A stretch of DNA of 64,000 nt. Origin: Setoptus koraiensis (Eukaryota; Animalia; Arthropoda). This document shows positions 7,667 to 48,851 of the stretch, one piece after another. The notes under the pieces were generated by a model. It made no database searches and was not told the DNA's origin. It was given only the letters and a program-made list of their open reading frames with translations. Both the position numbers and the translations under genes were made by a program. The stretch lies in assembly GCA_048013815.1 (NCBI GenBank), contig CM106585.1, positions 23,188,001 through 23,252,000 on the forward strand. The letters are read 5' to 3'. The stretch's first letter is position 1, and every line of letters begins with the position of its first letter.

Positions 7667-10600
7667 TCATTGGTATTGTTGATCCTCGTTAACAAAAACT
7701 GATCGTTGATTTTGTTGTTGTTGTGGATTGGCTGCTGTCACCCACGACCTATGTTTGGCACGGATAAAGTTTAGATTGGTTTCTGCTTGATCGGCACGGT
7801 CTTCGGCAGCTTCCAATTCGCGTTGGAATCTTCTTACACGAGTCAAATTCTGTTGTGTCAGGCCCTCTTGTTCCGCAATTTGTCTCTTGTATACCTTGAC
7901 CTTCTCAGATAATTTATCGCAAGTCTCTTGTGCCAATACGAAGCCCTTATGTTCCTCTTCGCATTGCACTAACAATTCCTTAACTCGTGCATCTTTCTTA
8001 CGCAATGTCTTTTGTGTTTCAGCATGACGACGTCTCTCCTCTTCCACCTCAATCTCAATATCACGAATACGTGACTCTAGCTTGGCAATAACACGCTTAC
8101 CGCCCGCCAATGCGTTAGCCTCAACCTCTTCCAGTCTCACCTGTAACGTTCTCACTTCCTGTTCTAGGCTCTTCTTAACGGAGTCTAATTTGGCTAGGCG
8201 CTCTTGTTCTTCGGTCAATAGATCTTTCACTGATTTGTTTTCAATGCTTAATTTTTGCACCTTTTCGTCGGCAAAGCGCAACTCCTTGGTCACCTCCTCG
8301 TAATCGCTGCTCAATGTGGCAAATTCGCCCTCTAATTTGTTCTTGGCCGCTGTCAGATTGACGTTTATCGTTTGCAACTCGTTCACCTTTTGCGAGGCCT
8401 CCTCGGCTGCCTGTTCGGCGGCCCGTTTGGCTCGCAACGCCGACTCAAAGTTCACTCTCATCTCCTCCAATTCGCCCTGTAATTGTTGGGCCCGACGTTG
8501 GGCGACATTGAGCGCATCAACAGCCTGGTTCAATTGTCTGTTGACCTCATCGTAATGGGCCTGTAGCTCTGTTATTTGTAGTCCCTGTCGTTTTATTGTC
8601 TTTTGTAAATCAATGTTTTGCTTGTTCACCACATCCAGTGTCATCTCCAATTCCGTTATCTGAGCTTGCATTTTCTTCTTGATGCGAGCCACTTCCGCTT
8701 TCAGTTTGGCCTCGGCCTCCACAAGTCGCATGTTGAGCTGCTCAATTTCGAGAGCGGTTGCCTTGCGCAATGCCTCTAATTCGTCCTCTTTCTGTTGTAG
8801 ACGCTTCTCATAGTCGTGTCTCATTGCCGCTATTTCGGCCGTCAATCGCTGACATTTGGCCTCCTCTTGTTTGCGTAATGTCTCCGCTTCGCGATAAGCC
8901 GCTGCCAATTCTTCGCGCTCATTCTCCAATCTCTTCAATTCCAATTCTTGTTCGTGCACCTTTCTAATAGCGTCATTCAATTGGTTCTTGGCGTCGGCTA
9001 GATCGTCTTGTGATTTCTTCAATTCTCTCTCTAATGCCGCCTTGGCGTCCTTCAATTTCTCATATTCGTGTGTCAATTTTTGCAATTCGGCCGCCTTTTG
9101 TCTCGCTTCGCGTTGAGCATTTTCCATCAGCATGGTTATCTCGTCACATTTGGCGCGCAAATCATTGTTGACCTTCTCCAATTGTTGGCATCTCTTCTCT
9201 AGATTTTGGGCATGAGTAGTGGCCTTCTCTAGGTCCATTATGAGCACCTCGACCTCCGATTGCAGGCGCGATTTTTGTTTCTCGAGCGAGCTGCATTTGT
9301 TGATCAGTGACTCCAATTGCTCCTCATACTCTTGTATACGTTGGGCAATCTTTCGTTTGAGGTCGTCAACTTCGTCGGCGTGCGCCAACAATTCGGCCTC
9401 ATATTTGGATTTCCACGAGGCAACGTCGCCGTTGGCCTTGGCCAATTGTCGCTCAACCTCAACGCGGGCCTCAGACTCTTCCTCTATTTGCACCTTGAGC
9501 GATTCCAATTCCACCTCCAGTGTGTGGCAGTGATTTTCCACACTGGCGCGCTTTCGTTCCTCCTCTTCGCATCGTCGTCTTGTTTCCTCTAATTGGGTGG
9601 CCAATTGTGATTTTAAGTGATTGACATTGTCCAATGACATCTTATAATCGTGTACCTCCTTGATGAGTTCAACATTTTCGTTGGCGAGACGAGTGCGCTG
9701 AGCGGTGACCTCAATAACTTGACGATTGATTTCCTCCACTTTAATGTTCAATTCGTAAATGGTGTGTTCGTGTTTCTCGACAATCTTTTGAACGGCCACC
9801 TTGTCTCTGTTTGATTGTTCCAATTGTGACATCAGCTCGAACACCTCAGCCTGAAATTTAGATTTCTCCTTTTCAGCTCTGTCGGCAAACAGTTACACAC
9901 AGTTAAAACGGGCAACAAGCATCGGAATAGAATCAATTATCAAGTCGAATCAGTCAGTTCAAATTTCAAATTAAATTATCACCGACCATGAAATATGGAA
10001 AACAATGGGAAATATGCGATGACCTACTTGCTCTTTTGCTTTTGCAATTGATCAATTTGATCTTGCATCTCGGCCGTGGCCGCCTGATGCTTGGTTCTCA
10101 AGTGATGAGCATTCTCTTCACTTTCAAGGTGGACATCCTCAAGTAATTTCCTCAATTTGGCCAATTCAGCATCGCGCTTCTTGTTCATCTCGGCCTGATA
10201 ATAGGAGGAATTTATTTAGTTATTAACGCATTAAGTTTGATCAACAAACGGCATACAGCGTGATTAAATGGTTGCGGGTTACAAACCTTCGACTCGCTTG
10301 AGCCTTCGGCGTCGTCAAGGCGCTCGGAAAGTTGCATGAGTTGAACCATGAGGTCGGATTTCTCGCGCTCAATCTAAACATTTGGGGTGACACGAACAAG
10401 CATGAACGTGATAGTAATCAAAATATTATCAGTAGATATCAGTATGGTGATAGTGCCAAGACTCACTCTCTGTCTGAGTTCTCTTTCGCCATCGAGATCC
10501 TCTTGAAGAAGGCGCACTTTGTCCTATTGTGAGCGACGAATAGTGGTGCAATTAATGATCGACCATGTGCAATTGAAAGGATTATTAGTTGCTAAGATTA

Positions 10601-23000: not shown

Positions 23001-23765
23001 TCAGTGGTAAGACTGTTTCCTCGGTGCCCTACTGGGTGTTCGAAATTCGAAGTTCGAAATTCGAATAAGAACGAGCATAGGAGTTGCTGGCCGCACATAA
23101 GCACTGTGCCCGGCGCATATTTTGTGCCGGGCTGCCGCAGTACAATTTATCGGGGACGGTGTGCCGAGGAAGCACAGATCTGTTGCACAGAGATTGTGCT
23201 TTGTTGAGAGTGAGTCAAGCGCAAGGTAACAACGGTGAGTGTGCAGTGTAAACTGTGTGTGTGAATTCTAACGATGCTTGCGCTTTGCGCTCATTTTGCT
23301 CGTCTCCTGTTGGCAGTTGTAAGTTGCAAGTTTTGTTTTTTGCACAAGTCGAAATATTCTATCTTCATCATCATCATCTGGTCCGTTTGTGATGATGAAA
23401 ATGCACACACACAAACAGACAGACAAACAGACAGACAAACAAACACACAAATTCATTCGTTCGTTCGCTCATTGGGACACACAGACACAAATATTCACAT
23501 ATATAGAATGACCACAAGAACTGATAATGTGTGTGTATATTATTATTATTATATATATTCACTAATATATATCTGTATTTATTATTATTATTACTATTAT
23601 TATTATCATCACCATAACTACTCTTATCATGATTATTACAACAACATTTGATTGAAGACGACAAAATCAGTATTATCATCATTATAGATATATAAATATT
23701 ACTATTGAAAACATTATATCAACAACAATAGATCATTGGTGCTAGCGAATCATTGTTGTTACACC

Positions 23766-26700
23766 ATGGATCAATCCGATCAACAGGCTGCCGGAATGGA
23801 ATGGTCATTCTCTTGGACTGACAGCACTGAATCGCAGATTCTTCGCAACTATGTTGTCAACTTTCTAAATCAGCCCACTGATAGAGAATATCCAGATTTA
23901 TGCCAATTACCCGACCTCACCGAACAGACATTGTTGGAAAATTTAAGAGCGCGCTTCGAGAGTAGCAATATATACACCTATGTTGGCTCCATTCTTGTTG
24001 CCGTTAATCCGTTTAAGATATTTCCAATATATCAGCCAAACATGGTGCAACTGTACCAAGGCGGTCGTCTTGGTGAATTTCCACCACACATATTTGCCAT
24101 TGCCGATGCCTCATATCAGACTATGCTAAGGCGACGCACAAATCAAACTATTGTGATCTCAGGCGAATCAGGCTCAGGTAAAACAACAAATACCAACCTG
24201 TTACTTCATCATCTTACATCATTGTCACGAAAAGGAGCAGGCTATGGTGTGGAACAGACACTTATAAGCGCCGGTCCCGTTTTAGAGGCATTCGGAAACG
24301 CCAAAACAAAACATAATAATAACTCAAGTCGCTTTGGTAAATTTATTCAAGTCAATTATAGAGAGAATGGTATGGTCAATGGGGCCATTGTACAAAAGTA
24401 TCTACTTGAAAAGTCAAGAATTGTATCTCAAGCAAAAAACGAGAGAAACTATCATGTATTTTACTATATGCTAGCAGGTTCTACGCAAGAAGTCAAAGAG
24501 GAATTTCATCTTACTCAAGCTAGTGACTATTTTTATTTAAACCAAACCGACTGTTACTCCATTGAGGACATTAGTGAGCCATTTGAATTTGAGAGACTAA
24601 AAGACTCCATGTTAGGAGTTGGTTTCTTACCAGAGAAACAGCACAGACTATTTAGTGTGCTTTCAGCTATATTACATTTAGGTAATATTGAATTCACAAA
24701 AAAATCTACTTATCACAGTGATGAAACTGTTCAAGTCAAAGACACCTCTGTCGTTGAGGTTATATCAAAATTATTAGGGATTAAAAAGACAACTCTATTG
24801 AACGCACTCACTTACAAACGAACAAAAGCTGCCAAAGGTGAAACAATAGTTATCAACTACAGGCTACCTGAAGCTATAGCAACCAGAGATGCCATGGCAA
24901 AGTGTCTATATGCCGCCTTGTTTGATTGGATTGTGACAAGAATCAATCAAGCGTTATTGTCCAAAAGACAGAATAGAGAATTCAAGGGAAACCACATAGG
25001 TATATTAGACATTTTTGGGTTTGAAGATTTCGGAGATCAAAACTATTTTGAACAATTCTGCATAAATTTTGCAAACGAGCACCTGCATTTTTATTTCAAT
25101 CAACACGTTTTTAAATATGAACAGGAGGAATACCGCAGAGAAAATATAGCGTGGAAAGAAATTGACTTTGTTGATAATACTGATTGCCTTCGTCTAATTG
25201 AAGGGAGGCCTCATGGTATGCTCTGTTTACTTGACGATCAATGCAATTTCCCAGGCGCTACAAATCAAACGACTTTACAAAAATTTGTAAATCATCATAA
25301 AGACAATCATCTTTTTGAAATACCTCCATGTCGCCAAAGCGCTTTCATCATCAAACACTATGCTGGTAAAGTGAAATATCAAATTACAGATTTTCGTGAG
25401 AAAAATTCTGATCTGATGCGCCCAGATATAGTGGGAGTCCTCAAGAGTAGTCACCTCACCTTTGTTAGAGAATTAGTAGGAACTTGCCCACTAGCAATGT
25501 TTAGATGGCAAGTTTTAAGAGCGTTCTTCAAGGCATATTTTATTTTTAGCAAATTGCGAGAAGCGTCAAAGATCAAGCATAATGGTAGGATAATCTCATC
25601 TCAAACAAACTCGCACTCTGTCAGTTCTTCTACTCCTTCATTCGCGTGTCGATTGCATGGCAATGATACACACTTATGTGCCCACCAAGCTAAAGTATTA
25701 TTCAAAGCTAGCCAAATAATGCAAAAACGACTAAATAAGGAACCTTCGTTTAAAGGCCGTGTTGAAAAAAGTATTAATCTCTTGCAAACTTTGAAACAGT
25801 TGACCGGCAGAGGTAGTCATCACGTCACCGGAAACAGGTCTGGGTCCAAACGAACTCCTACAGTAACTGCTCAATTTCAAGTTTCACTCAACCAACTCAT
25901 GGATACCTTGAATCAAGCTAATCCCTACTTCGTCAGGTGCATCAAGTCGAATGCAGAAAAGAGGCCTAATCACTTTGACGATGTTTGTGTACTGCTACAA
26001 CTTCGTTATACTGGTATGTTGGAGACAGTACGAATACGACAAAGCGGATACTCTGTGAGACTTTTATACACTGAATTTGCTCAACATTACAGGATACTTC
26101 TTGGCAAAGGCGCCTCTAGTCGGGAAGAAGATATCCGGCATTTCCTCATGAAACTAAATTTCAGCCCCGATAACTACCAAATGGGAAAAACGAAAGTTTT
26201 CATGAGAGAAACCGAAAAACTAGCTCTTGATGAAAAACTACATAAAGAAATTCTCAAAAGGATAATCTTATTACAAAGGAGAGTGAGAGCATGGATAGAA
26301 CGTCGAACTTATATACAAAAGAGAAATGCCGCCATAACAATACAGTCACACGTGAGGCGATGGCTAGCACAGAGAAGAATGGACAGTATAAAGAAGATAA
26401 AATCTGACGAAATGTTATTACACTATTCTGCAACAGTGATCCAGAAAACTTGGCGAGGTTACTTCCTTCGGCGCAGATATACAAAGCTCAGGTCAACTGT
26501 GATTATCTTGCAAAACTATATAAGAGCTTATCTTATTCATAAAAGGTATCTTCAGCTGAAGCAGATGAAAGAAAATTGTCCAAGCATTTTGACTAGTCCC
26601 ACAACTTCCATCAATGACCATAGGTCCCCCATGGTCATGTCTAGTGCTGAAAAACCGAGATCAAATAGGATATCATCATATACACCTAGGCAAAGTGTGA

Positions 26701-28709
26701 CTCCGCGCTCAACAGGGTCATCAAACAATTTGAAAAATCAACAAATCGGAAGCGCGAATGACATCGGTTTACCCACTTTAGATGAGTTCCCAGCTCCTCC
26801 TCCTAGAACGAAACTGAGAGGAAAGCTCACTGTATCGGCTTCAGTCGATGGAGTTCTGACACCATCTGTTGCATCTTTTTTGCCACCGCCATCCAAAATG
26901 CAGGCTGTATCTGTATCATTATCAACTCCCACGAAGCCATCGTCAAGTTTTGAACAGACTTCTCGTCATGAAGCACGAAGAAGTTCAAGATCATACAAGT
27001 ATGCACTTTCCAGAAAAGCCCCTAGTCAACCACCATACTCTGAAAGAAGTGTCAATACTTCTACTGAATCTAGTTGGAATGTTACCAGGACATGTGAATT
27101 TACCGATCCTAAAGATATCCTCATAACTGACGTTCAAGAATTGCAAAGCATGGACTTATTTATTTTCAAAAAAATATATCAAATGGACGAACAAAAGAGG
27201 ATATCCTCGAAAGAATCCACTGTAGATGTTGTCTTCAAATATGCACTGAGGGAATTTAGAGCTAATTTATTGAGTACCTACTCAGTTGCAACTCAGGATG
27301 GCCATTTATATATCAGTTACAAGAGTTTGATCGATCATTTTGGTCAGGTGATACTAAATGTTTGTCAGAAGAAAAAAACTTGGAAATCCTTTCCAGTTAT
27401 CATGGGGATCAATGCATTCAGAGGATATCTTGATGAATTCAGAACAATATCCTCCAAAAGAAAATTCAGCGATAAACTATCAAGAGACAGGAAGAAAGAA
27501 AATCGTTTTAAAAGGCGAGTAACTAAACGACAAATGAAAGAAATAGTTGAGAAAGAAGGCCATAAGATGTTTATGACTATTGCCAACATACCCACAGTTT
27601 GTGAAGTGTGCACCACCATAGTTAAACTAGGCACAAAGATACTTGTGTGTAACGATTGCAAATTGACTTGCCATAAGAAATGCCTTGCAAAGGTTGTCGT
27701 ATCTTGCCGTGATAACTCTTTGATACAGCAAGGAAAGAAAGTGTTTGGGGCTTCTCTAGAAAGGTTGGTGTTGGATGATGAACGAGTGCCAGCTGTCCTG
27801 GAACAGTTAATGTCGGCCATTGAAATGAAAGGGCTCTACGTTGAAGGACTTTACAGAAAATCAGCCACCCAATCTAAGATAAACGAATTGAAACAGAGAT
27901 TGGAGGAGGATCGTGTTAACGTAGATCTCGATAGCTACGGTATACATGTTCTTACCGCAGTTTTTAAGTCCTTCTTCAGAGAGATGCCGGAACCTCTGAT
28001 GACATTCCAATTGTATGACGATTTCTTATGGGCAACAGCAATCATGGACCTGCAAGAACGATGTCAAGTCATATTCTCACACATAAACAAACTCAGCAGA
28101 GTTAATTATGACCTCTTAGAAAGATTGACATTCCACCTAGCGCGAGTGGCTCTCGTTGAACATGCAAATCGCATGAGTGCAAGTTCTCTCGCCATTGTTT
28201 TCGCCCCATGTGTGCTCAGAACGGATAAAGTAATGCAAGCCCAAGACAGCTTTGACGATATAAGAAAACAAACAATGTAAGTAGCAAGCACAAAATACGC
28301 CTCACCACTTTATCTGTTGCATATCATCTTACTGATTATCTAACCAAATCTGTTTCAACTATATAACAATAGATGTCTTGAATGTATAATAACCGAGAGG
28401 ATGAAACAAGTTAAGGAGACTCTTGTAGAGATAGATATTCTGGATTGTGCCACACAATCAGCCAAAGCTCAACTCAACAGTATCAGACGCTCTGCTGTCA
28501 ATATAAAAGCAGTCCATCAGGCGGAACAAGTGAATATAGCTAAAGAGGAGGAGGCAAGGCTTACTCAACAGATAGAAAATCTTCAGAGTGAAAAGTCACA
28601 TCTCACCAATATGCTTCCTTCATTTAGAATGGCATCGGCAGGTTCTGATGACGAGATGGTCTTAGCAGGTGATAGTATTGATGATATGTTAGATAGCATG
28701 GGTTCGTGA
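23766..28709 (+). CDS. MYO9: Unconventional myosin IX (motor with loop-2 insert, ~4 IQ, C1, RhoGAP), >=1615 aa
   Basis: join(23766..28276, 28373..28709), 96-nt GT-AG intron. REYPDLCQLPDLTE, P-loop GESGSGKT, class-IX insert MFRWQVLRAFFKA, C1 (H..CEVC..CNDCKLTCHKKC) and RhoGAP GLYRKS are present. The true 5' end may lie on upstream exons (acceptor at 23730-23731). Confidence 0.95.
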
Positions 28710-31137: not shown

Positions 31138-31372
31138 TTGAGCTTTAATTGTTCGAAACAGCTAGTTGAAATTTCATTGACACTATTAAACTCAAACTTA
31201 ACGAAAATTTCGTGGTCCTGTAAACTTTATTACTTAAAAATGTAACTGATTTGCCATTGGACTACCTGTTATGATAACTTGTATCATGTTTTAGTAACAC
31301 GTCTTGTAATATTGTATTGAATATATTGTATCATAGCACATGACACTTTACAACAGTATTGTCACAGTCCAA

Positions 31373-35634: not shown

Positions 35635-38600
35635 CTAAATTTTATGCAAAACGGCGGGCAAGTTTTTGTGTATCCATTTCATTGGAAAACGAACATTTTG
35701 AAATTTTGTGTTTGAGGTTCTGTAAGCCACCGTAATAGGAAAAAGATGTTTTGTATTCATCAAGAGATCATTGTGTGGTGAATCAGCTTCTGACTTTTGA
35801 TTTAGATAATCTTGTAACTGCTTAATAAAGTCAGTGGAGATTTGTTCCTCATAACTAGATGTATAAAGATTAAGTATTTTGATGATTTGAGATGATCTAA
35901 CAAAACGATAAGAACAATAAGAGAAACACAGTTTAGTCTTACATTCATGTTAGATTAGATTCATAAGAATTCATAAACACACCAGGCTACTCACCTTAAT
36001 TTGTTGCACATCTCCGCTATAGTAACAATGTGCTCGGCAGTTTTTCGAGTTTGTAATAATTTAGTTGATTGTGTTATTGGATCCAATTGTTCAACAATCT
36101 CTTGCCATTTGATCAATTGTTTCTCTCTACACCATTGCTCTAAACATGACAGATTGAAGCGTATTTGAATGGCTTTGTTCCAATGACAGAGGTCTTTACG
36201 TAACAACAATTGATTTAATGATGTTGCGCATATCAAATAAAAAAGTTGCTTATAGATTTGTAATGCTATCTCTTGGTAGACGTTGTAATGATTTATGAGA
36301 TCGTGAATTGTGTTGAGCTCTCTGAGTAAAGCCTCCATGGGTTTATCACTTTGAATAGGGGAGGAAGTGGATTTTCGTCCTTTGTTCAGATCATTGCCAG
36401 GTTGCTGGTCGTCGTCGACTCCTGATGAGGCCAAACCTTCGTGTTCTAGCACTGCTCCAATAATCAGAGGCTGAATTCTAGAATAGATTAGTCGTACTAA
36501 TGCCTGATAGATCATATCAACTAATTCGTCGTACAATAGCCTGAAGTCGCTAAGATCGAAATTCTTCAATGTCTCATCAAACACACCATAGATGCCCTCA
36601 TCACTTGAATACTGTCGTAGATAGTTGACAATCTTACATGAATTGACCAGCCAAACTGTTAATAATTCAACAGAGTCCGATTTCTTTGCTATTTTTTTTA
36701 GATAATTCAACATCTTCGTTAGCAAACTTTGGACTCTAGGTTCATCATTGATGTGATCAATGTAACGTATGCACATGAACAACGCATTTGCTGGTACAGT
36801 TATGTCCTCCATAGTAGGCAAATCACTAACTTCCAAGTGATTAATAATAACATCGACAATGAAATCTTCATCCTCGCTATCGTGGCGCAACATGCCCACT
36901 TGTCGAGGAGGCGCAAAATCTCCACTTGTTGGTCCAGAATCATGAGAACTCGTCAAACTAGACTGATTCAAACTTAGATTCAAGCCAACAAGATCCAACA
37001 ATCTACTCTTACTTTGATTAAGTGATTGCTCCTTCTTGTTATTGTTAATAGTTAAAGATTGTTGGTCGTTATTCGTATATTTAACATTTGATAGCGGCGT
37101 TGAATTTTTAACAGTGACCAATTCACGTTCCATCTCCATCCATTTGTTCTTGTGAGCTTGACATTCTTCAATAAGTTGTTCGATGCGCATATCTTTGTTC
37201 TTCCTTTCTATATCCCATTCTTGCTCTAAGATGTCAAGTTTTTCTAGTAGCTCCTTGACATGACATCTCTCCAATTGAATTTCTTCTATGCGCTCCTCTC
37301 TATCCCTCTTAATATTATCTAATTCCTGGCGTAATAATTGCACTTCGTTTTTGAGTGATTTCAATAGAGATTCCTTTTTATCACTATCTTTCTTGTGTTC
37401 AACATCGTACACTTTTTGATTCTGGCTTGTCTCACTAAGTTTCTGTTGCAATTCAATTATCTTTATCTCTAGACCTCTATTCAATTTCTTCATATGCTCT
37501 ACACTGCGAGCCTCTTGTTTCAGTACTTTGAAAATTCGTTTGGCGGCCCATCGTCTGTAGGCTGATTGAGCAGTAATAATCTTAGATCGATAGGCTAGAT
37601 AATCTCTTCGTTGTTTGTGTCCACGCCAGTGACTTTGAATGACAATAGCAGCTTGCCACTTTTTGATAGCAATCAATTGCTTTCTAGCTAACAAACCTCT
37701 AACTCTTGCTTGTAATCTAATCGTGGCAGTGACGAGTTTGAGATAATTTGCTCTAGCTTTGTGGCAGCGCCACATGGACTGAATTTGAATAGCCGCTCTT
37801 GTTTGTCGCAAATGATTAAAAAGTCGTCTTGCTGCATAGCGCCTGAAATAGCTCTGTATTATTATCGAGGCTCTTCTCTTCTTCTGATATGCTCTTCTAT
37901 TCAACCAGCCTCTTATATGGCGCTGGATGATTGTCGCGTAATGCCTAAGTCTTTGAGCACGTATTCTTTCCAGGAAACTTACTTGGCCAGACCTGAAAAA
38001 AAGTTTAGTCTTACCAAATTGAAATATTGCGTTTACACTACCATGGCGTTCGATTAAACTCTCTTGGTATTCTCTTTCCTCTTTTAGTCGGATATGCGCG
38101 TACAAATCTTGTACATAAACGACTTCGGTAATGGCAGCACAAACTGCCTTTGGGTCAATTGAGGTCAGTGAACTACTCCTTGATTTAACTACAGAATCTT
38201 GATTGTCATTAAGATTAGCTGGATTTTGACGGGATTCAATCAATGATTCGTACTGTTTGTGTCCAACTATGACCACACTGTAACGTCGAGAAAAATCTTT
38301 ATAATTCCATCTTGATGGAAAACCATTAGTGCTAATTCTAATTGTTTCATAGACACCGCAAGCTTTCAATTGTTGGACGGCTCTCTCATCATCAAATTCA
38401 AATGCTGCCTTGCTGTCATTCGGTTTTATGCATCTGATGTAATGTGGTTCAGTTTGATTCAAGATACACATCAACGAAGCTAAAGATTCTCTAAATTGTG
38501 AGCCAACAGTTGCTTTCGATGGCTTACTTGATTTAGTTGGCGTAGTGGCAGGTGATTGAACAGTTGCTACTTTTTTTTTGTTGGCTTGTTTGGTGATTGT

Positions 38601-40223
38601 TGGCACTGATGGGTCATCGAAGATAAATTGAATCTTGTTGGATTGCTTCAATAGATCAATTTGTTCTTCCCAGATTGTATCTCTATTTTTCTCTAGAAAA
38701 GTATGCACCTTATAAGTGACTTTTTCAGCAAAATGCTTAATATTGAAGGAATCTTGATAGTTAAATTTAGGTTTTTCAAATATACTGTCTTTGAACATCC
38801 TGCCATTGACCTTACTTAATTGAGCATACAGTTTAGCGCACCATGTTTCGTCACTACCTCTTGGCATCTTACATTCCTCATCTAAAAGATTAAGGATTCC
38901 GATTGGTTTGGCCTCTATTATGTCAATAACAGGCTGATTGTCGCTGAACTCTATGAAAGCCCAATCTATACCCTCCCTTATGTATTCCTCTTGTTCCAAT
39001 TTAAAAACGTGTTGATTGAATTGTTGTTGAAGAACCTCGTTGGCATAGTTGATACAAAATTGCTCGAAGCTATTAAGATCGAAATTCTCGAATCCATAGA
39101 TGTCCAATACACCGATGAATTGTGTGTCTCTACTTTGGTGATTTGGCGAGGTGGGTGAGTCGAGCGGCACACCAGTGTTACCTAGGGCATTGTTAATTAA
39201 AGCTACAATCCATGAAAACAGACGCTCATAGATGAATTTAAGCATTGCATCTCGGCCATACTCGGCCATTTGTGAATTTAGTGGAGTTGATATGATTTCT
39301 TTGGCCCCGGTGCGCAATAGTCTGGTGGTTAGCCATTTCTCCGCTTGTTCCTTGTTCAATCCTAGTAAATCACAGAATATTTGAAAGTGTTTGCTGTTGA
39401 TGTCCAAATGACAATTTTCGTCCTGATCTTTCGTTTTGTTGCCATCAAAAACAATGTTTCCACCATGCAAAATGGCGGCCACAATGCGAAATATGACATC
39501 ACGACGTTTTTCGTTGATGCCCAATATTGTTAAAGCCTCGCAAAACCTAGTCAAATCATCTATTTGATCCTGTGGTTTAACATTGCCCAAATATCTGAAT
39601 TCTTCATCACCATTTAAAGCGAGATATTCCAGATTATGCCTAGTGGCATAGGTGACCATTTGGTAGAATATATGGAAGTTTCTTTCTCCGTTTTGTTGCT
39701 TAGTAACGCGCGATTTCTCTAACAAATATGTACGCATATGACCGCCTAATATTGTTCGTTTTTGTCTATCAAATAGAATTTGAATATATTTACCAAATCT
39801 GGACGAGTTGTCATTGCGAACTGTGGAGGCATTGCCGATGGCCTCCATAATGGGATTGCTGGCTAGCACTCTATTCTCAATATTTGTTGATTTGCTACAA
39901 GCTATGGAGGCAAAGTATCGCATTGAATATTTGGCCGACACTGTTTTGCCGGCGCCACTTTCGCCTGACACAATGATAGATTGGTTGGTGCCATTTCGTT
40001 CTAATTTTGAGTAGGCATCCTCGCTGACGGCAAATATGTGAGGCTCTAATTGGACGTGTCCGGATGAGGCGTGATAAGTTTCAATGGCCTGGTCGCCGTA
40101 GATGTCCAACTCCTGGTAGGGATTCACTGCAACCAGGGCAATGCCACACCATGTATAAATGGATCTCTCGTGGAGAAATCTCTTCTTGAGCGTCTGTAAT
40201 GTTTCGTCGTATTCTGAAATCAT
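35635..40223 (-). CDS. MYO5: Unconventional myosin V (motor, ~6 IQ, coiled coil, DIL cargo domain), >=1496 aa; 5' end uncertain
   Basis: complement(join(35995..40223, 35635..35896)). A 98-nt GT-AG intron restores the DIL end (RSSQIIKILNLYT..DLLMNTKHLFPITV..*). P-loop GESGAGKT. A tttcag acceptor at 40214-40216 suggests unidentified upstream exon(s). Confidence 0.94.
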
Positions 40224-40749
40224 TGCGTACAATAGTGATTGCGATAAACTATAAATAAATAATAATTAATAATAACATTAATGAACCAATTAAACTATTA
40301 ATTAATTGGTGTGATTGTGATTTGTGTGGTAGGCGCGTAGTTTCAATTAATAAAAGTTAGAAAGAAAAAAAACGATGGCATGACAATAAATGAGTTATAC
40401 GAAAAAGAAATGCGCGTACATGGCGTGGCGTTTAAGAAATTCAACAGTGGCCGTCCCATTGTCAGCTATATGAAATGTTGTTTGTTATGGCGCACACACA
40501 CACACACACACACCACTGCACCATTGCACCACGGCACCATTGCACCACTGCACTGTTGCACAACAACAACAACAGCGGACGGACATTTCTGTGCCACCGA
40601 GGTGTCCACTTGCTGTGCCGCAACTGTGTGCTCCACTTGCAAGTGGTCACTCTGTACACCTGTCCGCCTGCTCTGTGCCTGATAAATTATTAGTCATAAC
40701 ACAATCACCTGTTGTGTAACACTGTGCGAGTCAGTGACCCACACAAACG

Positions 40750-43800: not shown

Positions 43801-44146
43801 ATCGTTTATTTGACCATTATTATGCAACCAGATAATTTGTATTGGCATAGAGTGGTGAGAATTGTTGAATCAATCATGCAACTACTCCGAATAAAACCTG
43901 TATCTCATACAGGTATCTCATACATCTCAAGTTGTATGACTCATACTGGCAACAACCGATTCGAGAAACTTGTGCATCTTACGCAAGTGTATACAACAAT
44001 GATGATCTCAATGTAAGATGATCTACATCTAACATCTTTTGCACGATTATTTGTCAGAGTTCTCTTGTACAGTTAGAATTGCGTGCTAATCTAGCTGACA
44101 ACATTTCACTTGGCACTCGAATGAGTGGATGAACTGCAGTAAAGTA

Positions 44147-44488
44147 CTGTGTGCGTTTTTTCCAATGGCTTTTCTCCTACTTACTTCTTTGCCCGCCAAG
44201 GGCGCAGCGGGCGCACAAGGATGCACAGCTAAGCGTAGAGTGTATCGATAAATGTTTCAATTGGTTGACGTTACTCAACAGATAGCTAGCAAACAACTAG
44301 AGGCGCTGCGATCACTGCACTCACTACTTTGACGGCAGTTCATCACTGGCAGTTTACTCGCGAAACAGCTATACTGCGGCACATACTGCGACTGACGCTC
44401 ACTCACACTGCATATGAAAATCTGAGTGCGCCGCCCTGGCGGCTTCTAAAAGAAATGGGAAAAAAGCCATTGGAAAAAACGCACCCAG
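44147..44488. mobile_element. MITE-like non-autonomous DNA transposon (342 bp, ~27-bp TIRs, TA duplication)
   Basis: Left CTGTGTGCGTTTTTTCCAATGGCTTTT vs reverse complement of the right end CTGGGTGCGTTTTTTCCAATGGCTTTT (1 mismatch). Flanked by TA on each side within an AG-TA-CT site; no ORF. Confidence 0.8.
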
Positions 44489-44639
44489 TACTCCTACCCT
44501 AACTTGTTTTTGCTTGTTGTTGTTGCTACAGACTTACTACTGCATTGGACTTTATGATGTAACCATGAATGACTCATGCAAAAGTAGTCTTTAGTAACTT
44601 TTCAGTTTCATTACAGAGGGCGCTGAGATAACCAACACA

Positions 44640-44863
44640 TGTAACGCCAGCGTTATCGCTGTTGAATATTCACATGTCCATATCCACGCACGGACATATC
44701 CATACTCTTATATTCACCAACCGCATATAAATAGTAGTGTTTGTATCTCAAACACTTCACTTGTGCTTCAACTCTCATACAATAAACATCTAACAGCTAA
44801 AGTAAACCTCCCTCAGCGTCATATTAGTATATCTTGTACCGACTGAACGATTTGGTCGTTACA
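44640..44863 (+). repeat. 5' LTR (224 bp)
   Basis: TGTAACGCCA...CGTTACA; TATAAATA box near 44726 and AATAAA near 44781. Positions 44745-44863 are identical to 48233-48351. Confidence 0.92.
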
Positions 44864-44866
44864 AAT

Positions 44867-44883
44867 TGGCGTCAACGGGTGGA
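44867..44883 (+). other. Primer-binding site, tRNA-Asn-like
   Basis: TGGCGTCAACGGGTGGA, 3 nt after the 5' LTR. TGG complements tRNA CCA, and CGGGTGGA matches the complement of the TCCACCCG T-arm end of animal tRNA-Asn as recalled from memory; the isoacceptor is not verified. Confidence 0.65.
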
Positions 44884-45121
44884 TGACGCTCTAGGGAAAT
44901 AAAAGTTTAGAATAATAGTTTAGGATAATAGTTATATCGAATACCGATAACTAGAAGTATCAAGTCCGGAGGTGAAACGCACTCCGTGATCAAATATTAG
45001 GCACCCCAAACTTAAATTTATTGGACTAGGAAATTTCCTAGTCCACAACAGACATCAAAGTCGAAATTAACAGACATCAAAGTCGAAAACAACAGACATC
45101 AAAGTCAAAACACAAGGCAAG

Positions 45122-46894
45122 ATGCCGATAAATACTAGAAATACTATAAGAGATGACCAACAGCAGGGTCAAGACCAAATGGAATCACCAAACCAAATAA
45201 ACAACAATAACCAAGATGGTAATGTAAGCCTTTCAGGTAATGACGACGGGTTGGACCCAAGATTGTTATCGGTGATCAACACCATGATTTCAGCTAACAA
45301 CGCAGCTTTGACTGCAAACATAGCCCAAATTGTATCGCAGACAGTAAGCTCTACATTTGAGGCTCAGCAAAGAAGAACAAGCCAAGGATCAGTTTTAGGT
45401 GGACGCACTAACAATGTTAATGTTGAGAACAACATCCCACTACGAAACGATCAACCACCGGAATATTCGAACTTATTCCAAAGCAACAACAATGGCCCAC
45501 GAGAAATTTCTCGTGAGCCATACATGCCACCAGGTTCATCAAGAGATGACGACCGATCGCACAGAGCATCTTCCGAGACTAGGAGAACAACCTATCAAGG
45601 AATGAACGATGAAGCTTTTCAAAGATCCCTTTATGAACCGTTCGCAAGACCACACTGCAATGGGGCAGTACCCATACATCCCGTTGAACCTTCTAAATTC
45701 AATGGTGACCCCAGGAAAGCCCGAAATTGGCTCAGAGAATTCTCAGAGACATGTACAATCAATGGATACGACGACCTACAAAAGAAGTTAAGAATCGTAG
45801 CTTACTTAACGGATGAGGCAAAAGAATGGTATTACGAACTGAAAAGCCGCCGCCCAGACATAAGTTGGATCAATTTGCAGAGCGAATTCCTAAGTGACTT
45901 CTCCTCAAATAACACCTCAATTCAACTATTCAAGACCCTGAGCGAGGCCCGACAACGCCGAGATGAGAGACCCTTCACGTATCTCTTAAGAGTGCTCGGA
46001 TACTGTCGAGATTACAACGTCGACATGGCAGAACGAGAGAAAGTAGAATGGTGTCTTCGCGGTCTACATCGCAACATTGCAAATACCATCACATGCAATA
46101 TAGCACCGCAGCAGATGAGCCTCGACTGGTTAAGAACACAACTGAAAAAGTGGTCTATCCAGACAGAAGAGGAACGCCAAGATGCTCGCGGGAAATTTCC
46201 CGGAGCACGAAGAAGCCAAGCTAAGAACAAGAAAAGACTAGACCAGAACCTAGATCCCAACACGTTCGAGGTCGGCGATCTCGTCGTCATAAAGAGACCA
46301 ACTCGAGTGAAAGGTGGAGTTAAGAAATTAACATTCACGTATATTGGACCCTTCCGTATATCAAAGAAACTCAATTCACTCAACTTTGAAGTCGTAAATC
46401 TGAGCGGCAGACCTCGTAGCTTCTCGGTCCATCCAATGCACCTCAGAAAGTATTACCTACGTAACGACTTGCCAACAATCGAGGAACCTCGTATCCTAGA
46501 TGTCAGAGAAGAAATAAACGACTTTGCAGAGCAAATTGAGTCAAATGACAACGGCGACACACTCAAGACATATGCCAAGACTAAAGAAGCTAGCAACGGG
46601 AAATTTCCCGCTGCTAATCAACGCCGAATTGACAATACATGCGATATTGACGAAAAACGGATAACCGGAAGTGACTCTCAAATTATGGCGGACCCGCATG
46701 ATATTAACCTAGACGACCTACAAGAAGAATATTCTGTCGATAAACGTCTACAGTCACCGCCGACCATAGTAAAGCCAGTCTCACCGCCTGACTGTATCAC
46801 TGACGCGACAAATACAAAGACAACACATGATCACGTCAATGCGCCTGCGCGACCCAAGCGGGTCACAAAGACACCCGCGCGTCTTGATTTGTGA
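45122..46894 (+). CDS. Retrotransposon Gag fused in frame to integrase C-terminal GPY/F (SH3-like) region, 590 aa
   Basis: Gag core PSKFNGDPRKARNWLREF..LRIVAYLTDEAKEWY..ARQRRDERPFTYL, followed directly by KKRLD..FEVGDLVVIK..KLTFTYIGPFRI..VHPMHLRKY. No DSGA/DTGA protease, YxDD RT or DDE motifs were seen. Confidence 0.88.
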   Translation: MPINTRNTIRDDQQQGQDQMESPNQINNNNQDGNVSLSGNDDGLDPRLLSVINTMISANNAALTANIAQIVSQTVSSTFEAQQRRTSQGSVLGGRTNNVNVENNIPLRNDQPPEYSNLFQSNNNGPREISREPYMPPGSSRDDDRSHRASSETRRTTYQGMNDEAFQRSLYEPFARPHCNGAVPIHPVEPSKFNGDPRKARNWLREFSETCTINGYDDLQKKLRIVAYLTDEAKEWYYELKSRRPDISWINLQSEFLSDFSSNNTSIQLFKTLSEARQRRDERPFTYLLRVLGYCRDYNVDMAEREKVEWCLRGLHRNIANTITCNIAPQQMSLDWLRTQLKKWSIQTEEERQDARGKFPGARRSQAKNKKRLDQNLDPNTFEVGDLVVIKRPTRVKGGVKKLTFTYIGPFRISKKLNSLNFEVVNLSGRPRSFSVHPMHLRKYYLRNDLPTIEEPRILDVREEINDFAEQIESNDNGDTLKTYAKTKEASNGKFPAANQRRIDNTCDIDEKRITGSDSQIMADPHDINLDDLQEEYSVDKRLQSPPTIVKPVSPPDCITDATNTKTTHDHVNAPARPKRVTKTPARLDL

Positions 46895-46967
46895 ACACGC
46901 AACACGTGGTCAGCAAGATAACAAACAAACAACAACAGCTGCTCGTGCACGGATAATTATCCGCGCA

Positions 46968-47219
46968 CTAGTATCAGCACAAATATCAGCATAAATATCA
47001 TAACCAGTATCATAGCCAGTATCATAGCCAGTATCATAACCAGTATCATAACCAGCATCATAACCAGCATCATAACCAGTATCATAACCAGTATTATAAA
47101 CAGTATCATAACCAGTATCATAACCAGTATCATAACCAGTATCATAACCAGTATCATAACCAGTATCATAACCAGTATCATAACCAGTATCATAACCAGT
47201 ATCATAACCAGTATCATCA
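46968..47219. repeat. 12-bp tandem array (CCAGTATCATAA)n, ~18 good plus ~3 degenerate units
   Basis: Read directly; regular units at 47004+12n to 47208. Lies between the two element ORFs. Confidence 0.95.
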
Positions 47220-47268
47220 CATCCAACATCGACAATTGTACGGATAATTATCCGCACCACCACGTGTC

Positions 47269-48126
47269 ATGGAGTGCCTCACATACCCTCAGTTATTGGA
47301 TATCAAGGAATTGGTAGGTATCGAAGCCAATCCCGACCATGCTCTGGACGTTCAGACGGCCCAGACTCTTCAATGCTCCCTCTGCCTCTATGTCTCAACT
47401 GAAGCCGTCAAACACATAGCCTGCGACCACCTGTTCTGTAGCTCCTGCCTCAAAAACTATCTAAGTGAACAATACCTCGGGGTATCTTACGAAGGTGCCT
47501 TTAACCTCATCAGGAGAAAGGAATGTCCTGTCTGCAGACAGTTGTGGTATAGAGAAAGTATAGATAATCCAAACGAAGCCTCACAGCTATGCCGACCAAC
47601 TCGGCTCGAACTTAGAGTCATAAAAGGGCTGACACTACAATGCCAGAAATGCCCTGGTACCTACCCACTGGAGGGTATTGGTACCCATAGGTGCCTACCC
47701 GAGACGCCTGGGAAATTTCCCAGCACGTCCGTAGAGGCTGCAACCAGTGAGAGTGGCTACATTGTTATCAGTAACAGCGGACACTTTGAGTTCCGGTCTA
47801 AGCCAACTAACAGGAATCGGCTATTCACTTTAAGGTTCGAAGGCAAATCTATTGCATCCTATTGCTTCCGGAAGAAGCTGACGGTGATGATGATCAAAGA
47901 AAGAATGGCTGCGCTAGCTGGTGTCACTCCAGCGGAAATAGAACTATTTAAGTTCTCACATCAAACATTAGACGACCACGACCAAGTGGAGTCGTTCCAC
48001 CAGTGTAGCGGCAGGATTGTCTTGGAAGGTTTCAAAGTATCTACTATTAACAAAAATGAGTTGCTGTCTTTGAGGATTCAGCCAGCTACAACATCACACG
48101 AGAGAAGCGAGGACGCTCCATTCTAA
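47269..48126 (+). CDS. RING (C3HC4) - Zn finger - ubiquitin-like domain protein carried inside the LTR element, 285 aa
   Basis: CSLC-x12-CDHLFCSSC...KECPVCR is a C3HC4 RING. LTLQCQKC..PLEGIGTHRC is a TRAF/RAG1-like finger. TVMMIKERMAALAGVTPAEIELF..QTLDDHDQVESF follows the ubiquitin-fold pattern. The stop codon overlaps the PPT. Confidence 0.8.
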   Translation: MECLTYPQLLDIKELVGIEANPDHALDVQTAQTLQCSLCLYVSTEAVKHIACDHLFCSSCLKNYLSEQYLGVSYEGAFNLIRRKECPVCRQLWYRESIDNPNEASQLCRPTRLELRVIKGLTLQCQKCPGTYPLEGIGTHRCLPETPGKFPSTSVEAATSESGYIVISNSGHFEFRSKPTNRNRLFTLRFEGKSIASYCFRKKLTVMMIKERMAALAGVTPAEIELFKFSHQTLDDHDQVESFHQCSGRIVLEGFKVSTINKNELLSLRIQPATTSHERSEDAPF

Positions 48127-48134
48127 GAAGGAGG
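48125..48134 (+). other. Polypurine tract
   Basis: AAGAAGGAGG, 3 nt upstream of the 3' LTR TG. Confidence 0.8.
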
Positions 48135-48137
48135 TCA

Positions 48138-48351
48138 TGTAACGCCACTGTTGTAACTATCCACACACGTACTATTCATCTCATGGTTCACTTATGATAT
48201 TCACTTGTAAACACTTATATATGCGTGTATTCATCTCAAACACTTCACTTGTGCTTCAACTCTCATACAATAAACATCTAACAGCTAAAGTAAACCTCCC
48301 TCAGCGTCATATTAGTATATCTTGTACCGACTGAACGATTTGGTCGTTACA
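48138..48351 (+). repeat. 3' LTR (214 bp)
   Basis: TGTAACGCCA...CGTTACA; the last 119 bp are identical to the 5' LTR. Ends exactly at the assembly gap. Confidence 0.9.
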
Positions 48352-48851
48352 NNNNNNNNNNNNNNNNNNNNNNNNNNNNNNNNNNNNNNNNNNNNNNNNN
48401 NNNNNNNNNNNNNNNNNNNNNNNNNNNNNNNNNNNNNNNNNNNNNNNNNNNNNNNNNNNNNNNNNNNNNNNNNNNNNNNNNNNNNNNNNNNNNNNNNNNN
48501 NNNNNNNNNNNNNNNNNNNNNNNNNNNNNNNNNNNNNNNNNNNNNNNNNNNNNNNNNNNNNNNNNNNNNNNNNNNNNNNNNNNNNNNNNNNNNNNNNNNN
48601 NNNNNNNNNNNNNNNNNNNNNNNNNNNNNNNNNNNNNNNNNNNNNNNNNNNNNNNNNNNNNNNNNNNNNNNNNNNNNNNNNNNNNNNNNNNNNNNNNNNN
48701 NNNNNNNNNNNNNNNNNNNNNNNNNNNNNNNNNNNNNNNNNNNNNNNNNNNNNNNNNNNNNNNNNNNNNNNNNNNNNNNNNNNNNNNNNNNNNNNNNNNN
48801 NNNNNNNNNNNNNNNNNNNNNNNNNNNNNNNNNNNNNNNNNNNNNNNNNNN
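48352..48851. other. Assembly gap (500 N)
   Basis: Run of N; the poly-X ORFs here are artefacts. Confidence 1.

What the first reader, a model, noticed from the sequence alone, without database searches (positions are those of the whole stretch)
45023..47723. Five long palindromes sharing the core GAAATTTC are spread along the element, four inside coding sequence
Seen: perfect palindromes GGACTAGGAAATTTCCTAGTCC (22 bp, 45023-45044, 5'UTR), CACGAGAAATTTCTCGTG (18 bp, 45498-45515, extends to 30 nt with one mismatch), CGGGAAATTTCCCG (46189-46202; again at 46597-46610, extending to 26 nt with one mismatch) and CTGGGAAATTTCCCAG (16 bp, 47708-47723). Five of the six AAATTT hexamers I found in the element are such centres. 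The arms differ between sites but stay self-complementary, and three sites read GKFP in frame, in both ORFs. The naive expectation for palindromes >=14 bp in 3.7 kb is about 3700 x 4^-7 = 0.2. A GAAATTTC outside the element (31167-31176) reaches only 10 bp. Established: self-complementary motifs drive retroviral and retrotransposon RNA dimerisation, and GGGAAATTTCCC resembles Rel/NF-kB sites. Inference: a distributed RNA dimerisation/packaging code that lets a Pol-less element hitch-hike, or an array of homodimeric protein sites. The signal in the RING ORF suggests the cargo has been adapted to the element.
Basis: partly seen in the sequence, partly recalled or inferred. Interest (0 to 1): 0.8.

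Follow-up and report, generated by a model that had tools for sequence, protein, structure and literature searches.

The report
Conserved palindromic hairpins along a retrotransposon
A pol-less Ty3/gypsy-type retrotransposon in an arthropod genome carries seven long perfect palindromes with the same AATT centre, and a diverged relative keeps them through compensating changes, so they are probably selected RNA pairing elements (likely for genome dimerisation or packaging), not chance or protein motifs.

Summary
The element (44640-48351) holds 8 perfect palindromes of at least 14 bp, against 0.19 expected (0 of 2000 shuffles). Seven share an AATT centre: the five reported, plus two copies of a 14-mer that bracket a 12-bp tandem array. 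The eighth is chance.

Synonymous-codon shuffles show the coding sequence does not explain them.

A 1.4-kb related contig (L001, about 70% identical) covers three of the sites, and all three are still perfect palindromes:
- Two are unchanged, inside islands of conservation.
- One carries two mirror-image compensating substitutions, one of which changes an amino acid.
- The chance palindrome is not kept.

Each site folds into a stable hairpin with an AAUU apex, or could form a perfect duplex with a second RNA.

Best reading: these are selected self-pairing elements of the genomic RNA, most likely multi-point dimer-linkage or packaging contacts, and probably also favoured points for template switching. 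This function is inferred, not shown. The Rel/NF-kB reading is not supported.

Palindromes 1-3 could not be tested in relatives because I left out the look-up of the gag contig. Four slips are declared in the full report.

The parts
44640..44863 (+). 5' LTR (TG...CA)
   Evidence: Read directly. Its last 127 nt are 97.6% identical to the 3' LTR. The first ~90 nt differ apart from the first 9 nt.
45022..45045 (+). Palindrome 1: 24-bp perfect, AATT centre, in the 5' untranslated region between the LTR/primer-site region and the ORF1 start
   Evidence: Hairpin -16.3 kcal/mol, z -6.0. It is also formed in the fold of the whole leader.
45045..45112 (+). 22-bp tandem repeat, 3.1 copies, directly after palindrome 1
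45122..46894 (+). ORF1, 590 aa, given as one part. It has a Gag-like domain and an integrase C-terminal SH3-like domain in one open frame. The protease, reverse transcriptase, RNase H and most of the integrase of relatives are absent, as is the Gag zinc knuckle (one deletion, no stops or frameshifts).
   Evidence: Pfam Retrotrans_gag aa 226-316 and SH3_Tf2-1 aa 385-423. Relatives P0001 and P0003.
45498..45515 (+). Palindrome 2: 18-bp perfect (30 nt with one mismatch), in the N-terminal part of ORF1, read as REISR
   Evidence: Hairpin -18.6 kcal/mol, z -7.5.
46189..46202 (+). Palindrome 3: 14-bp perfect, in the linker between the Gag-like and integrase-like domains of ORF1, read as GKFP
   Evidence: Hairpin -15.9 kcal/mol, z -4.4. 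The GKFP residues are kept in P0001.
46597..46610 (+). Palindrome 4: 14-bp perfect (26 nt with one mismatch), in the C-terminal tail of ORF1, read as GKFP
   Evidence: In L001 (7-20) it differs by two mirror-image substitutions and is still a perfect 14-bp palindrome.
46950..46963 (+). Palindrome 6: 14-bp perfect, AATT centre, in the spacer upstream of the tandem array
   Evidence: Hairpin -15.9 kcal/mol, z -4.2. L001 has only one copy of this site.
46996..47217 (+). 12-bp tandem array, 18.5 copies, bracketed by palindromes 6 and 7; absent from L001
47241..47254 (+). Palindrome 7: same 14-mer as palindrome 6, 15 nt upstream of the ORF2 start
   Evidence: It is identical in L001 (431-444), inside a 28-nt island that is 96% identical in a spacer that otherwise does not align.
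47269..48126 (+). ORF2, 285 aa, with a C3HC4 RING finger (aa 36-91) and an uncharacterised C-terminal half
   Evidence: Pfam. Its only relative is P0002, 75% identical. Window versus L001: codon positions 1+2 are 84% identical and third positions 45%.
47708..47723 (+). Palindrome 5: 16-bp perfect, between the RING/zinc region and the C-terminal half of ORF2, read as GKFP
   Evidence: 16 of 16 bases are identical in L001 (926-941), inside the longest invariant run of the ORF (23 nt).
48126..48134 (+). Polypurine tract just before the 3' LTR
   Evidence: Read. The same bases are present in L001.
48138..48351 (+). 3' LTR, followed at once by a 500-N assembly gap (48352-48851)

Best explanation
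The seven AATT-centred palindromes are selected cis-acting pairing elements of the element's single-stranded genome (its RNA). Each can fold on itself into a stable hairpin with a four-base AAUU apex. With the same site on a second RNA molecule it can instead form a perfect 14-24-bp duplex.

I think they most likely act as several dimer-linkage or packaging contact points, spaced about 290-690 nt apart along the whole transcript. They would hold two genomic RNAs together: two copies of this element, or this element and a pol-bearing relative that carries the same sites. That would get the RNA into particles.

As a side effect, such sites would be preferred places for reverse transcriptase to switch templates. 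This fits their position at the seams between the element's modules.

Shown: the excess, its independence from the coding sequence, hairpin stability, and conservation with compensating changes. Inferred: that the molecule concerned is RNA, that the pairing is between molecules, and that the purpose is dimerisation or packaging.
For: - Excess over chance, and over shuffles that preserve the protein.
- All seven sites fold as hairpins. Six are at -14.5 to -18.6 kcal/mol with z -4.2 to -7.5. In most, the stem continues past the perfect part after a single mismatch.
- The computed homodimer is 10.8-12 kcal/mol better than two hairpins.
- Over 10 sites (7 in the window, 3 in L001), AATT is invariant in 10/10. 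The five pairs next to it are paired in 100% of cells, and each shows changes on both sides.
- L001 is about 70% identical, with third codon positions at 45%. In it:
  - Palindrome 5 is 16/16 identical, in the longest invariant run of ORF2.
  - The spacer palindrome is identical, in a 28-nt island.
  - Palindrome 4 differs by two mirror-image substitutions. One is synonymous and one changes Pro/Ser, so pairing is kept at the cost of the protein.
  - Two further both-side changes lie in outer stems.
  - L001 itself has 3 palindromes >=14 bp, against 0.09 expected (0/2000).
- The non-AATT palindrome is not kept.
- GKFP occurs 3 times against 0.004 expected, always with the same minority codons. 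The peptide therefore follows from the DNA motif.
- Palindrome 1 lies in the leader, where dimer sites of Ty1, Ty3 and retroviruses lie (PMC6844567, PMC11381356, PMC516450).
- Dimer linkages are recombination hot spots (PMC516450). Here one palindrome lies in the linker where ORF1 passes from Gag-like to integrase-like similarity, and a pair brackets an array that the relative lacks.
Against: - No experiment bears on RNA dimers or packaging in this element.
- Known retroelement dimer sites are short (6-7 nt in Ty1 and Ty3) and confined to the 5' few hundred nucleotides. Five of these seven sites lie far downstream.
- A four-base apex is too small for a classical kissing loop.
- There are no G-U pairs in the perfect parts. 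The same structure can therefore form in either strand of cDNA or as a DNA cruciform, and the molecule is not identified.
- The comparison rests on one relative and three sites. Palindromes 1-3 are untested at the DNA level.
- The covariation table is partly circular, because the sites were chosen for being palindromes.
- Some outer-stem pairs are broken in the relative.
Confidence: 0.45

Rival explanations
1. The sites are hairpins recognised one by one by a protein that reads the invariant AAUU apex on a stem of any sequence. The protein could be the element's own Gag-integrase-tail protein, a helper's Gag, or a host factor for export, localisation or translation. There would be no RNA-RNA pairing between molecules. 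Packaging signals scattered along some single-stranded RNA virus genomes work this way (from my own knowledge, not tested here).
For: The apex is invariant in 10/10 sites while the stems covary. Hairpins are stable. The sites are spread rather evenly, 291-689 nt apart. Palindrome 7 sits just upstream of the ORF2 start and is conserved there.
Against: Nothing requires a loop that a protein reads to be self-complementary, yet it is self-complementary at every site. No binding protein is known. Rfam has no such family.
Confidence: 0.2
2. The sites are double-stranded DNA sites for a homodimeric DNA-binding protein (Rel/NF-kB-like, E2F-like, or another), forming an enhancer array inside the element.
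For: The 8-nt E2F site printed in PMC9749859 matches one half of palindromes 3 and 4. The same paper uses a 16-mer containing the 12-bp core as an E2F element. Insect retroelements often carry regulatory sites downstream of the LTR (own knowledge).
Against: - Only 2 of 7 sites match that E2F motif, and L001 has none.
- The arms differ between sites.
- The relative changed both halves of palindrome 4 in mirror fashion. Independent half-sites would not be expected to do this.
- The symmetry extends to 24-30 nt, beyond usual protein sites.
- Five sites lie deep in coding sequence.
- I had no reliable Rel motif to test. See the slip in the full report.
Confidence: 0.1
3. The palindromes are a by-product of how the element is copied or rearranged, with no function. 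They would be scars or hot spots of template switching, fold-back synthesis or DNA-level hairpin/cruciform events.
For: They sit at seams between modules: the inter-domain linker of ORF1, both sides of the tandem array, and between the two halves of ORF2. There are no G-U pairs in the perfect parts.
Against: - Scars would decay. Instead the sites are islands of conservation at about 70% overall identity, one with compensating changes.
- The half-lengths of the coding palindromes (7, 7, 8 and 9 nt) are mostly not multiples of three, so fold-back insertion would have broken the frames.
- GKFP is also present in the closest full-length Gag, so that site predates the pol-less form.
Confidence: 0.1
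4. The palindromes are chance, or an assembly artefact.
For: None beyond the assembly gap next to the 3' LTR.
Against: 0 of 2000 shuffles reach the count. The same sites are present in an independent short-read assembly (L001).
Confidence: 0.01

Closest known systems
Ty1 PAL1/PAL2 and Ty3 DS/PAL6 dimerisation palindromes (PMC6844567, PMC11381356)
   Same: They are self-complementary sequences in the genomic RNA of LTR retrotransposons, in the leader or the start of gag. They pair between two RNAs, alternative sites can substitute for each other, and they are conserved among family members.
   Different: Those are 6-7 nt long and lie within the first ~400-560 nt. Here the palindromes are 14-24 nt perfect (26-30 nt with one mismatch). 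There are seven with one shared centre, spread over 2.7 kb, including the second ORF and the spacer. No dimer has been shown here.
Retroviral dimer linkage structures (review PMC516450)
   Same: They are palindromic stem-loops that can pass from hairpin to extended duplex, are linked to packaging, and act as hot spots of template switching.
   Different: Those are concentrated in the 5' leader and usually expose a loop of six or more bases for a kissing contact. Here the apex is four bases and the sites are dispersed.
Dispersed packaging-signal stem-loops of some single-stranded RNA viruses (own knowledge, not tested here)
   Same: They are many stem-loops along the genome, with a shared apical motif and variable stems.
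   Different: They are not described for retrotransposons. There the motif need not be self-complementary, and capsid binding was shown there but not here.
E2F or Rel/NF-kB-type palindromic DNA sites
   Same: They resemble the 12-bp core in sequence. A 16-mer containing it is used as an E2F element in PMC9749859.
   Different: Only a minority of the sites match. The relative loses the match while keeping the palindrome. The arms vary and the symmetry is too long.

Membership tests
Retroelement dimer-linkage palindromes | Self-complementary sequence within the genomic transcript | tested here: met
   Seven perfect palindromes of 14-24 bp lie between the LTRs on the coding strand.
Retroelement dimer-linkage palindromes | Location in the 5' leader or the start of gag | tested here: inconclusive
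   Met by palindrome 1 (leader) and loosely by palindrome 2 (376 nt into ORF1). The other five lie 1.1-2.6 kb further downstream.
Retroelement dimer-linkage palindromes | Self-complementarity conserved among relatives, with compensating changes | tested here: met
   3 of 3 testable sites are kept in L001, one by a mirror-image double change. Palindromes 1-3 were not tested.
Retroelement dimer-linkage palindromes | Palindrome exposed in an apical loop large enough for a kissing contact | tested here: not met
   The predicted apex is four bases at all sites. Only the extended-duplex mode is open.
Retroelement dimer-linkage palindromes | The RNA is dimeric in particles and the site contributes to the dimer | not testable with these tools
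   Only computed energies are available: the homodimer is 10.8-12 kcal/mol better than two hairpins.
Rel/NF-kB binding-site array | Match to the family's binding consensus | not testable with these tools
   No motif library is on hand.
Rel/NF-kB binding-site array | The contacted bases of each half-site are conserved in relatives | tested here: not met
   At palindrome 4 the relative differs in both half-sites, in mirror fashion. Palindromes 6 and 7 have other bases in the arms.
E2F site (as printed in PMC9749859) | Presence of the 8-nt motif | tested here: not met
   Present in one half of palindromes 3 and 4 only, which is 2 of 7 sites. Absent from L001.
Ty3/gypsy-type LTR retrotransposon (non-autonomous derivative) | LTRs with TG...CA ends, a polypurine tract, Gag, and relatives with the order protease - RT - RNase H - integrase | tested here: met
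   LTRs and tract. Retrotrans_gag. P0003 shows gag-asp_proteas, RVT_1, RT_RNaseH, Integrase_H2C2, rve and SH3 in that order. The element itself lacks pol apart from the integrase tail.
Dispersed packaging-signal hairpins | Multiple hairpins with a shared apex and variable stems along the genome | tested here: met
Dispersed packaging-signal hairpins | Capsid protein binds the hairpins | not testable with these tools
   No binding data are available.

The most novel reading that the evidence does not exclude
A retrotransposon lineage uses a genome-long 'zipper' of seven long self-complementary sites with one shared centre, placed in linkers of both ORFs and in the spacers, to pair two RNAs at many points. 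Its Gag has lost the zinc knuckle and carries an integrase C-terminal domain instead. A pol-less element could then pair with, be packaged with, and recombine with a helper. The nucleic-acid code overrides the protein sequence where the two conflict.
Probability: 0.3. Interest if true: 0.75.

Novelty: new variant of a known kind. Interest (0 to 1): 0.6.

Why it matters
How LTR retrotransposon RNAs find each other and enter particles is known for only a few yeast elements, and it is essentially unknown how non-autonomous elements are taken along.

This element offers unusually long, countable sites that are conserved through compensating changes. The questions become ones of plain description: which sites are paired, with what, and in which copies.

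It is also a clear case of a nucleic-acid constraint written through two reading frames. It creates the same tetrapeptide three times and is kept at the cost of an amino-acid change.

Tried and rejected
- **Other copies in the window:** none, by blastn and tblastn of the element against the rest of the window.
- **Rfam:** no family matches the element, even at E <= 1.
- **tRNA genes to name the primer:** none in the window.
- **AlphaFold2 model of ORF2** from its two-sequence alignment: mean pLDDT 32, unusable, so no fold search was run.
- **PDB sequence search with ORF2:** only weak, generic RING matches.
- **An NCBIfam scan** failed because of a frame error of mine and was not repeated.
- **Literature search for the 12-bp core:** only an E2F reporter element in rice.
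- **Long-range pairing between the two identical copies of palindromes 3/4 or 6/7 as the selected feature:** rejected. The relative keeps complementarity within the site at palindrome 4 rather than identity to palindrome 3, and it has only one copy of the spacer palindrome.
- **GKFP as a protein motif:** rejected. It is absent from all but the two closest of 151 relatives, and the relative has GKFS at palindrome 4.
- **The palindrome at 47528-47541 as a family member:** rejected.
Full report
**What is there**

The finding lies in an LTR retroelement at 44640-48351. Its layout is as follows.

| Feature | Coordinates |
|---|---|
| 5' LTR | 44640-44863 |
| Leader containing a 22-bp x 3.1 repeat | up to 45121 |
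| ORF1 (590 aa) | 45122-46894 |
| Spacer containing a 12-bp x 18.5 tandem array | 46895-47268 |
| ORF2 (285 aa) | 47269-48126 |
| Polypurine tract | 48126-48134 |
| 3' LTR, followed at once by a 500-N gap | 48138-48351 |

- ORF1 has a Retrotrans_gag domain (aa 226-316) and an integrase C-terminal SH3-like domain (aa 385-423 or so).
- ORF2 has a C3HC4 RING finger.
- The relative P0003 (1583 aa) shows the Ty3/gypsy order protease - RT - RNase H - integrase.

Count of breaks in the window's element:
- pol is missing through one internal deletion. Protease, RT, RNase H and most of the integrase are absent.
- The zinc knuckle that the Gag relatives P0001 and P0007 have is also absent.
- There are no stops or frameshifts in what remains.
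- I give no closer place for the deletion (see slips below).

The neighbouring genes are myosins, a TBC RabGAP, thymidylate synthase, Tim44 and an insect-type cuticle protein. They point to gene-rich arthropod DNA. Nothing here looks human.

**Check of the observation**

All five palindromes are present, and the first is 24 bp rather than 22.
- The element holds eight perfect palindromes of at least 14 bp. The mean is 0.185 (maximum 3) in 2000 dinucleotide-preserving shuffles.
- That is 2.16 per kb, against 0.17 per kb in the rest of the window.
- Shuffling synonymous codons, which keeps protein and codon usage, gives 0.10 for ORF1 (observed 3, 0/1000) and 0.08 for ORF2 (observed 2, 2/1000).
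- GKFP occurs three times against 0.004 expected from composition. Each time it uses the same codons, and two of these are minority codons. The peptide is a consequence of the DNA motif.

The same 14-mer occurs at 46950-46963 and 47241-47254, centred on AATT like the five, on either side of the tandem array. In total, 7 of the 24 AATT in the element are centres of >=14-bp palindromes, against 0 of 572 outside (Fisher 7e-11). The eighth palindrome (47528-47541, in the RING finger) has another centre and folds no better than shuffles.

**Structure**

Taken as RNA, six of the seven sites fold into hairpins of -14.5 to -18.6 kcal/mol (z -4.2 to -7.5). Palindrome 7 is weaker, at -5.7 kcal/mol. All have an AAUU apex. 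In most, the stem goes on for 4-5 more pairs after a single mismatch, so the symmetry reaches 26-30 nt. Palindrome 1 is also formed in the fold of the whole leader. A homodimer of each site is computed to be 10.8-12 kcal/mol better than two hairpins, as expected for any palindrome. The centres are 291-689 nt apart.

**Relatives**

The word search found one relative for each ORF:
- P0001 is a 445-aa Gag with a knuckle, 60% identical.
- P0002 is 284 aa and 75% identical.

The full-library search with ORF1 found 675 relatives. GKFP occurs only in P0001 and P0002 among the 151 proteins held, so the motif belongs to this sub-lineage alone. P0001 keeps GKFP at palindrome 3 and P0002 keeps it at palindrome 5. 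P0006 (694 aa, 31% identical) is also a Gag fused to an integrase tail without a knuckle.

**The DNA test**

I looked up the contig of P0002. L001 is 1382 bp, from a Logan assembly. It proved to be the 3' part of a related element: ORF1 tail, spacer, RING ORF, polypurine tract and LTR start. It is about 70% identical to the window.

| Site | Window | L001 | Outcome |
|---|---|---|---|
| Palindrome 4 | CGGGAAATTTCCCG | CGGAAAATTTTCCG (7-20) | Two substitutions at mirror positions keep a perfect 14-bp palindrome. One is synonymous; the other turns GKFP into GKFS. |
| Palindrome 5 | 47708-47723 | 926-941 | 16/16 identical, including 5/5 third codon positions, where the ORF average is 45%. It starts the longest invariant run of the ORF (23 nt). 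Only 1.3% of 16-nt windows in that alignment are invariant. |
| Spacer palindrome | 47241-47254 | 431-444 | Identical, inside a 28-nt island (96%) in a spacer that otherwise does not align. |
| Control (47528-47541) | 14-bp palindrome | homologous position | 11/14 identical and no longer a palindrome. |

Further points:
- L001 has one copy of the spacer palindrome and no tandem array.
- L001 on its own has 3 palindromes >=14 bp, against 0.09 in shuffles (0/2000).
- Two more both-side changes lie in outer stems: at palindrome 4, and between the window's site 6 and the L001 spacer site. Some outer pairs are broken.

Over the ten sites, AATT is invariant in 10/10. The five adjoining pairs are paired in every cell, each with changes on both sides. 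The sixth position is unpaired in 6/10. The outer five pairs are paired in 50-70% of cells, against 24-49% in slid controls. This table is partly circular, because the sites were picked as palindromes. The comparison with L001 is not circular.

**Interpretation**

Selection acts on self-complementarity within each site. That is the mark of a nucleic-acid structure, not of a protein motif or a pair of independent protein half-sites. I put this sub-claim at about 0.8.

Which structure, and for what purpose, is inference. I favour multi-point RNA-RNA pairing for dimerisation or packaging (0.45), for four reasons:
- The invariant centre is itself self-complementary. A duplex needs this and a loop does not.
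- Palindrome 1 sits in the leader, where Ty1, Ty3 and retroviral dimer sites lie (PMC6844567, PMC11381356, PMC516450).
- The element lacks pol and the Gag knuckle, so it must rely on a relative. The closest full Gag keeps at least the residues of palindrome 3.
- Dimer linkages are template-switching hot spots (PMC516450, PMC6894440). The sites sit at seams: one lies in the linker where ORF1's similarity passes from Gag relatives to integrase relatives, and a pair brackets an array that the relative lacks.

Against this reading:
- Known sites are 6-7 nt long and lie near the 5' end.
- A four-base apex cannot kiss.
- The absence of G-U pairs leaves cDNA or DNA structures open.
- The comparison rests on one relative.

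The rivals are protein-read hairpins (0.2), DNA sites for a dimeric factor (0.1), functionless by-products of copying (0.1) and chance (0.01).

The E2F motif printed in PMC9749859 matches one half of palindromes 3 and 4 only, and nothing in L001.

It has no known cellular parent, so the idea cannot be tested.

- I did not look up the 5016-bp contig that encodes P0001.
- I did not scan any collection by pattern or by protein for more copies.
- Palindromes 1-3 are therefore untested at the DNA level.
- No spliced model was tried.

- (a) Notebook entry 2 and my working locate the deletion of the element more closely than the operators' line allows.
I give the result no weight and write none of them out.
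- (c) In my working I recalled a few short motifs of known retroviruses from memory.
- (d) Notebook entry 1 said I would fetch neither contig. I then looked up the contig of P0002, judging that a 1.4-kb contig holding only a RING-finger gene cannot be a virus of animals.

Noticed in passing
window 45122-46894; P0006: ORF1 joins a Gag without a zinc knuckle to the C-terminal SH3-like domain of integrase in one frame. A distant relative (P0006, 694 aa, 31% identical) has the same architecture, so it may be a maintained design in which the integrase tail takes over the nucleic-acid-binding role of the knuckle.
   Followed up: partly
window 47269-48126; L001 487-1341: The RING-finger ORF2 has only one relative among 5.8 billion proteins, and that relative also sits in such an element. 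It is under purifying selection (codon positions 1+2 are 84% identical, third positions 45%). Its C-terminal half has no family match and the structure model failed.
   Followed up: partly
window 44640-44863 and 48138-48351: The two LTRs of this one copy are 97.6% identical over their last 127 nt. Their first ~90 nt do not align, apart from the first 9 nt. The cause could be a recombinant copy, gene conversion, or a chimeric assembly next to the 500-N gap.
   Followed up: partly
window 46950-47254: A 12-bp x 18.5 tandem array is bracketed by two copies of the same 14-bp palindrome. The relative L001 has one copy and no array.
   Followed up: yes
window 45045-45112 and 44898-44933: The leader has a 22-bp x 3.1 repeat directly after palindrome 1, and a 13-bp x 2.8 repeat nearer the LTR. 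They could be regulatory repeats of the kind seen in leaders of insect retroelements (own knowledge).
   Followed up: no
window 44143-44201 and 44434-44492: A 59-nt inverted repeat (78% complementary, 232 nt apart) lies about 150 nt upstream of the element. It looks like a small foldback or MITE-like insertion.
   Followed up: no
window 7667-9844 (-), 23736-28280 (+), 35991-40232 (-): Three long open frames of different myosin classes lie within 33 kb: a myosin tail; head + IQ + C1 + RhoGAP; and head + IQ + DIL. Between them are TBC RabGAP, thymidylate synthase, Tim44 and a cuticle protein gene.
   Followed up: partly
window 47528-47541: A 14-bp palindrome over the last cysteine pair of the RING finger has another centre, has no folding excess and is not kept in the relative. 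It serves as an internal chance control.
   Followed up: yes
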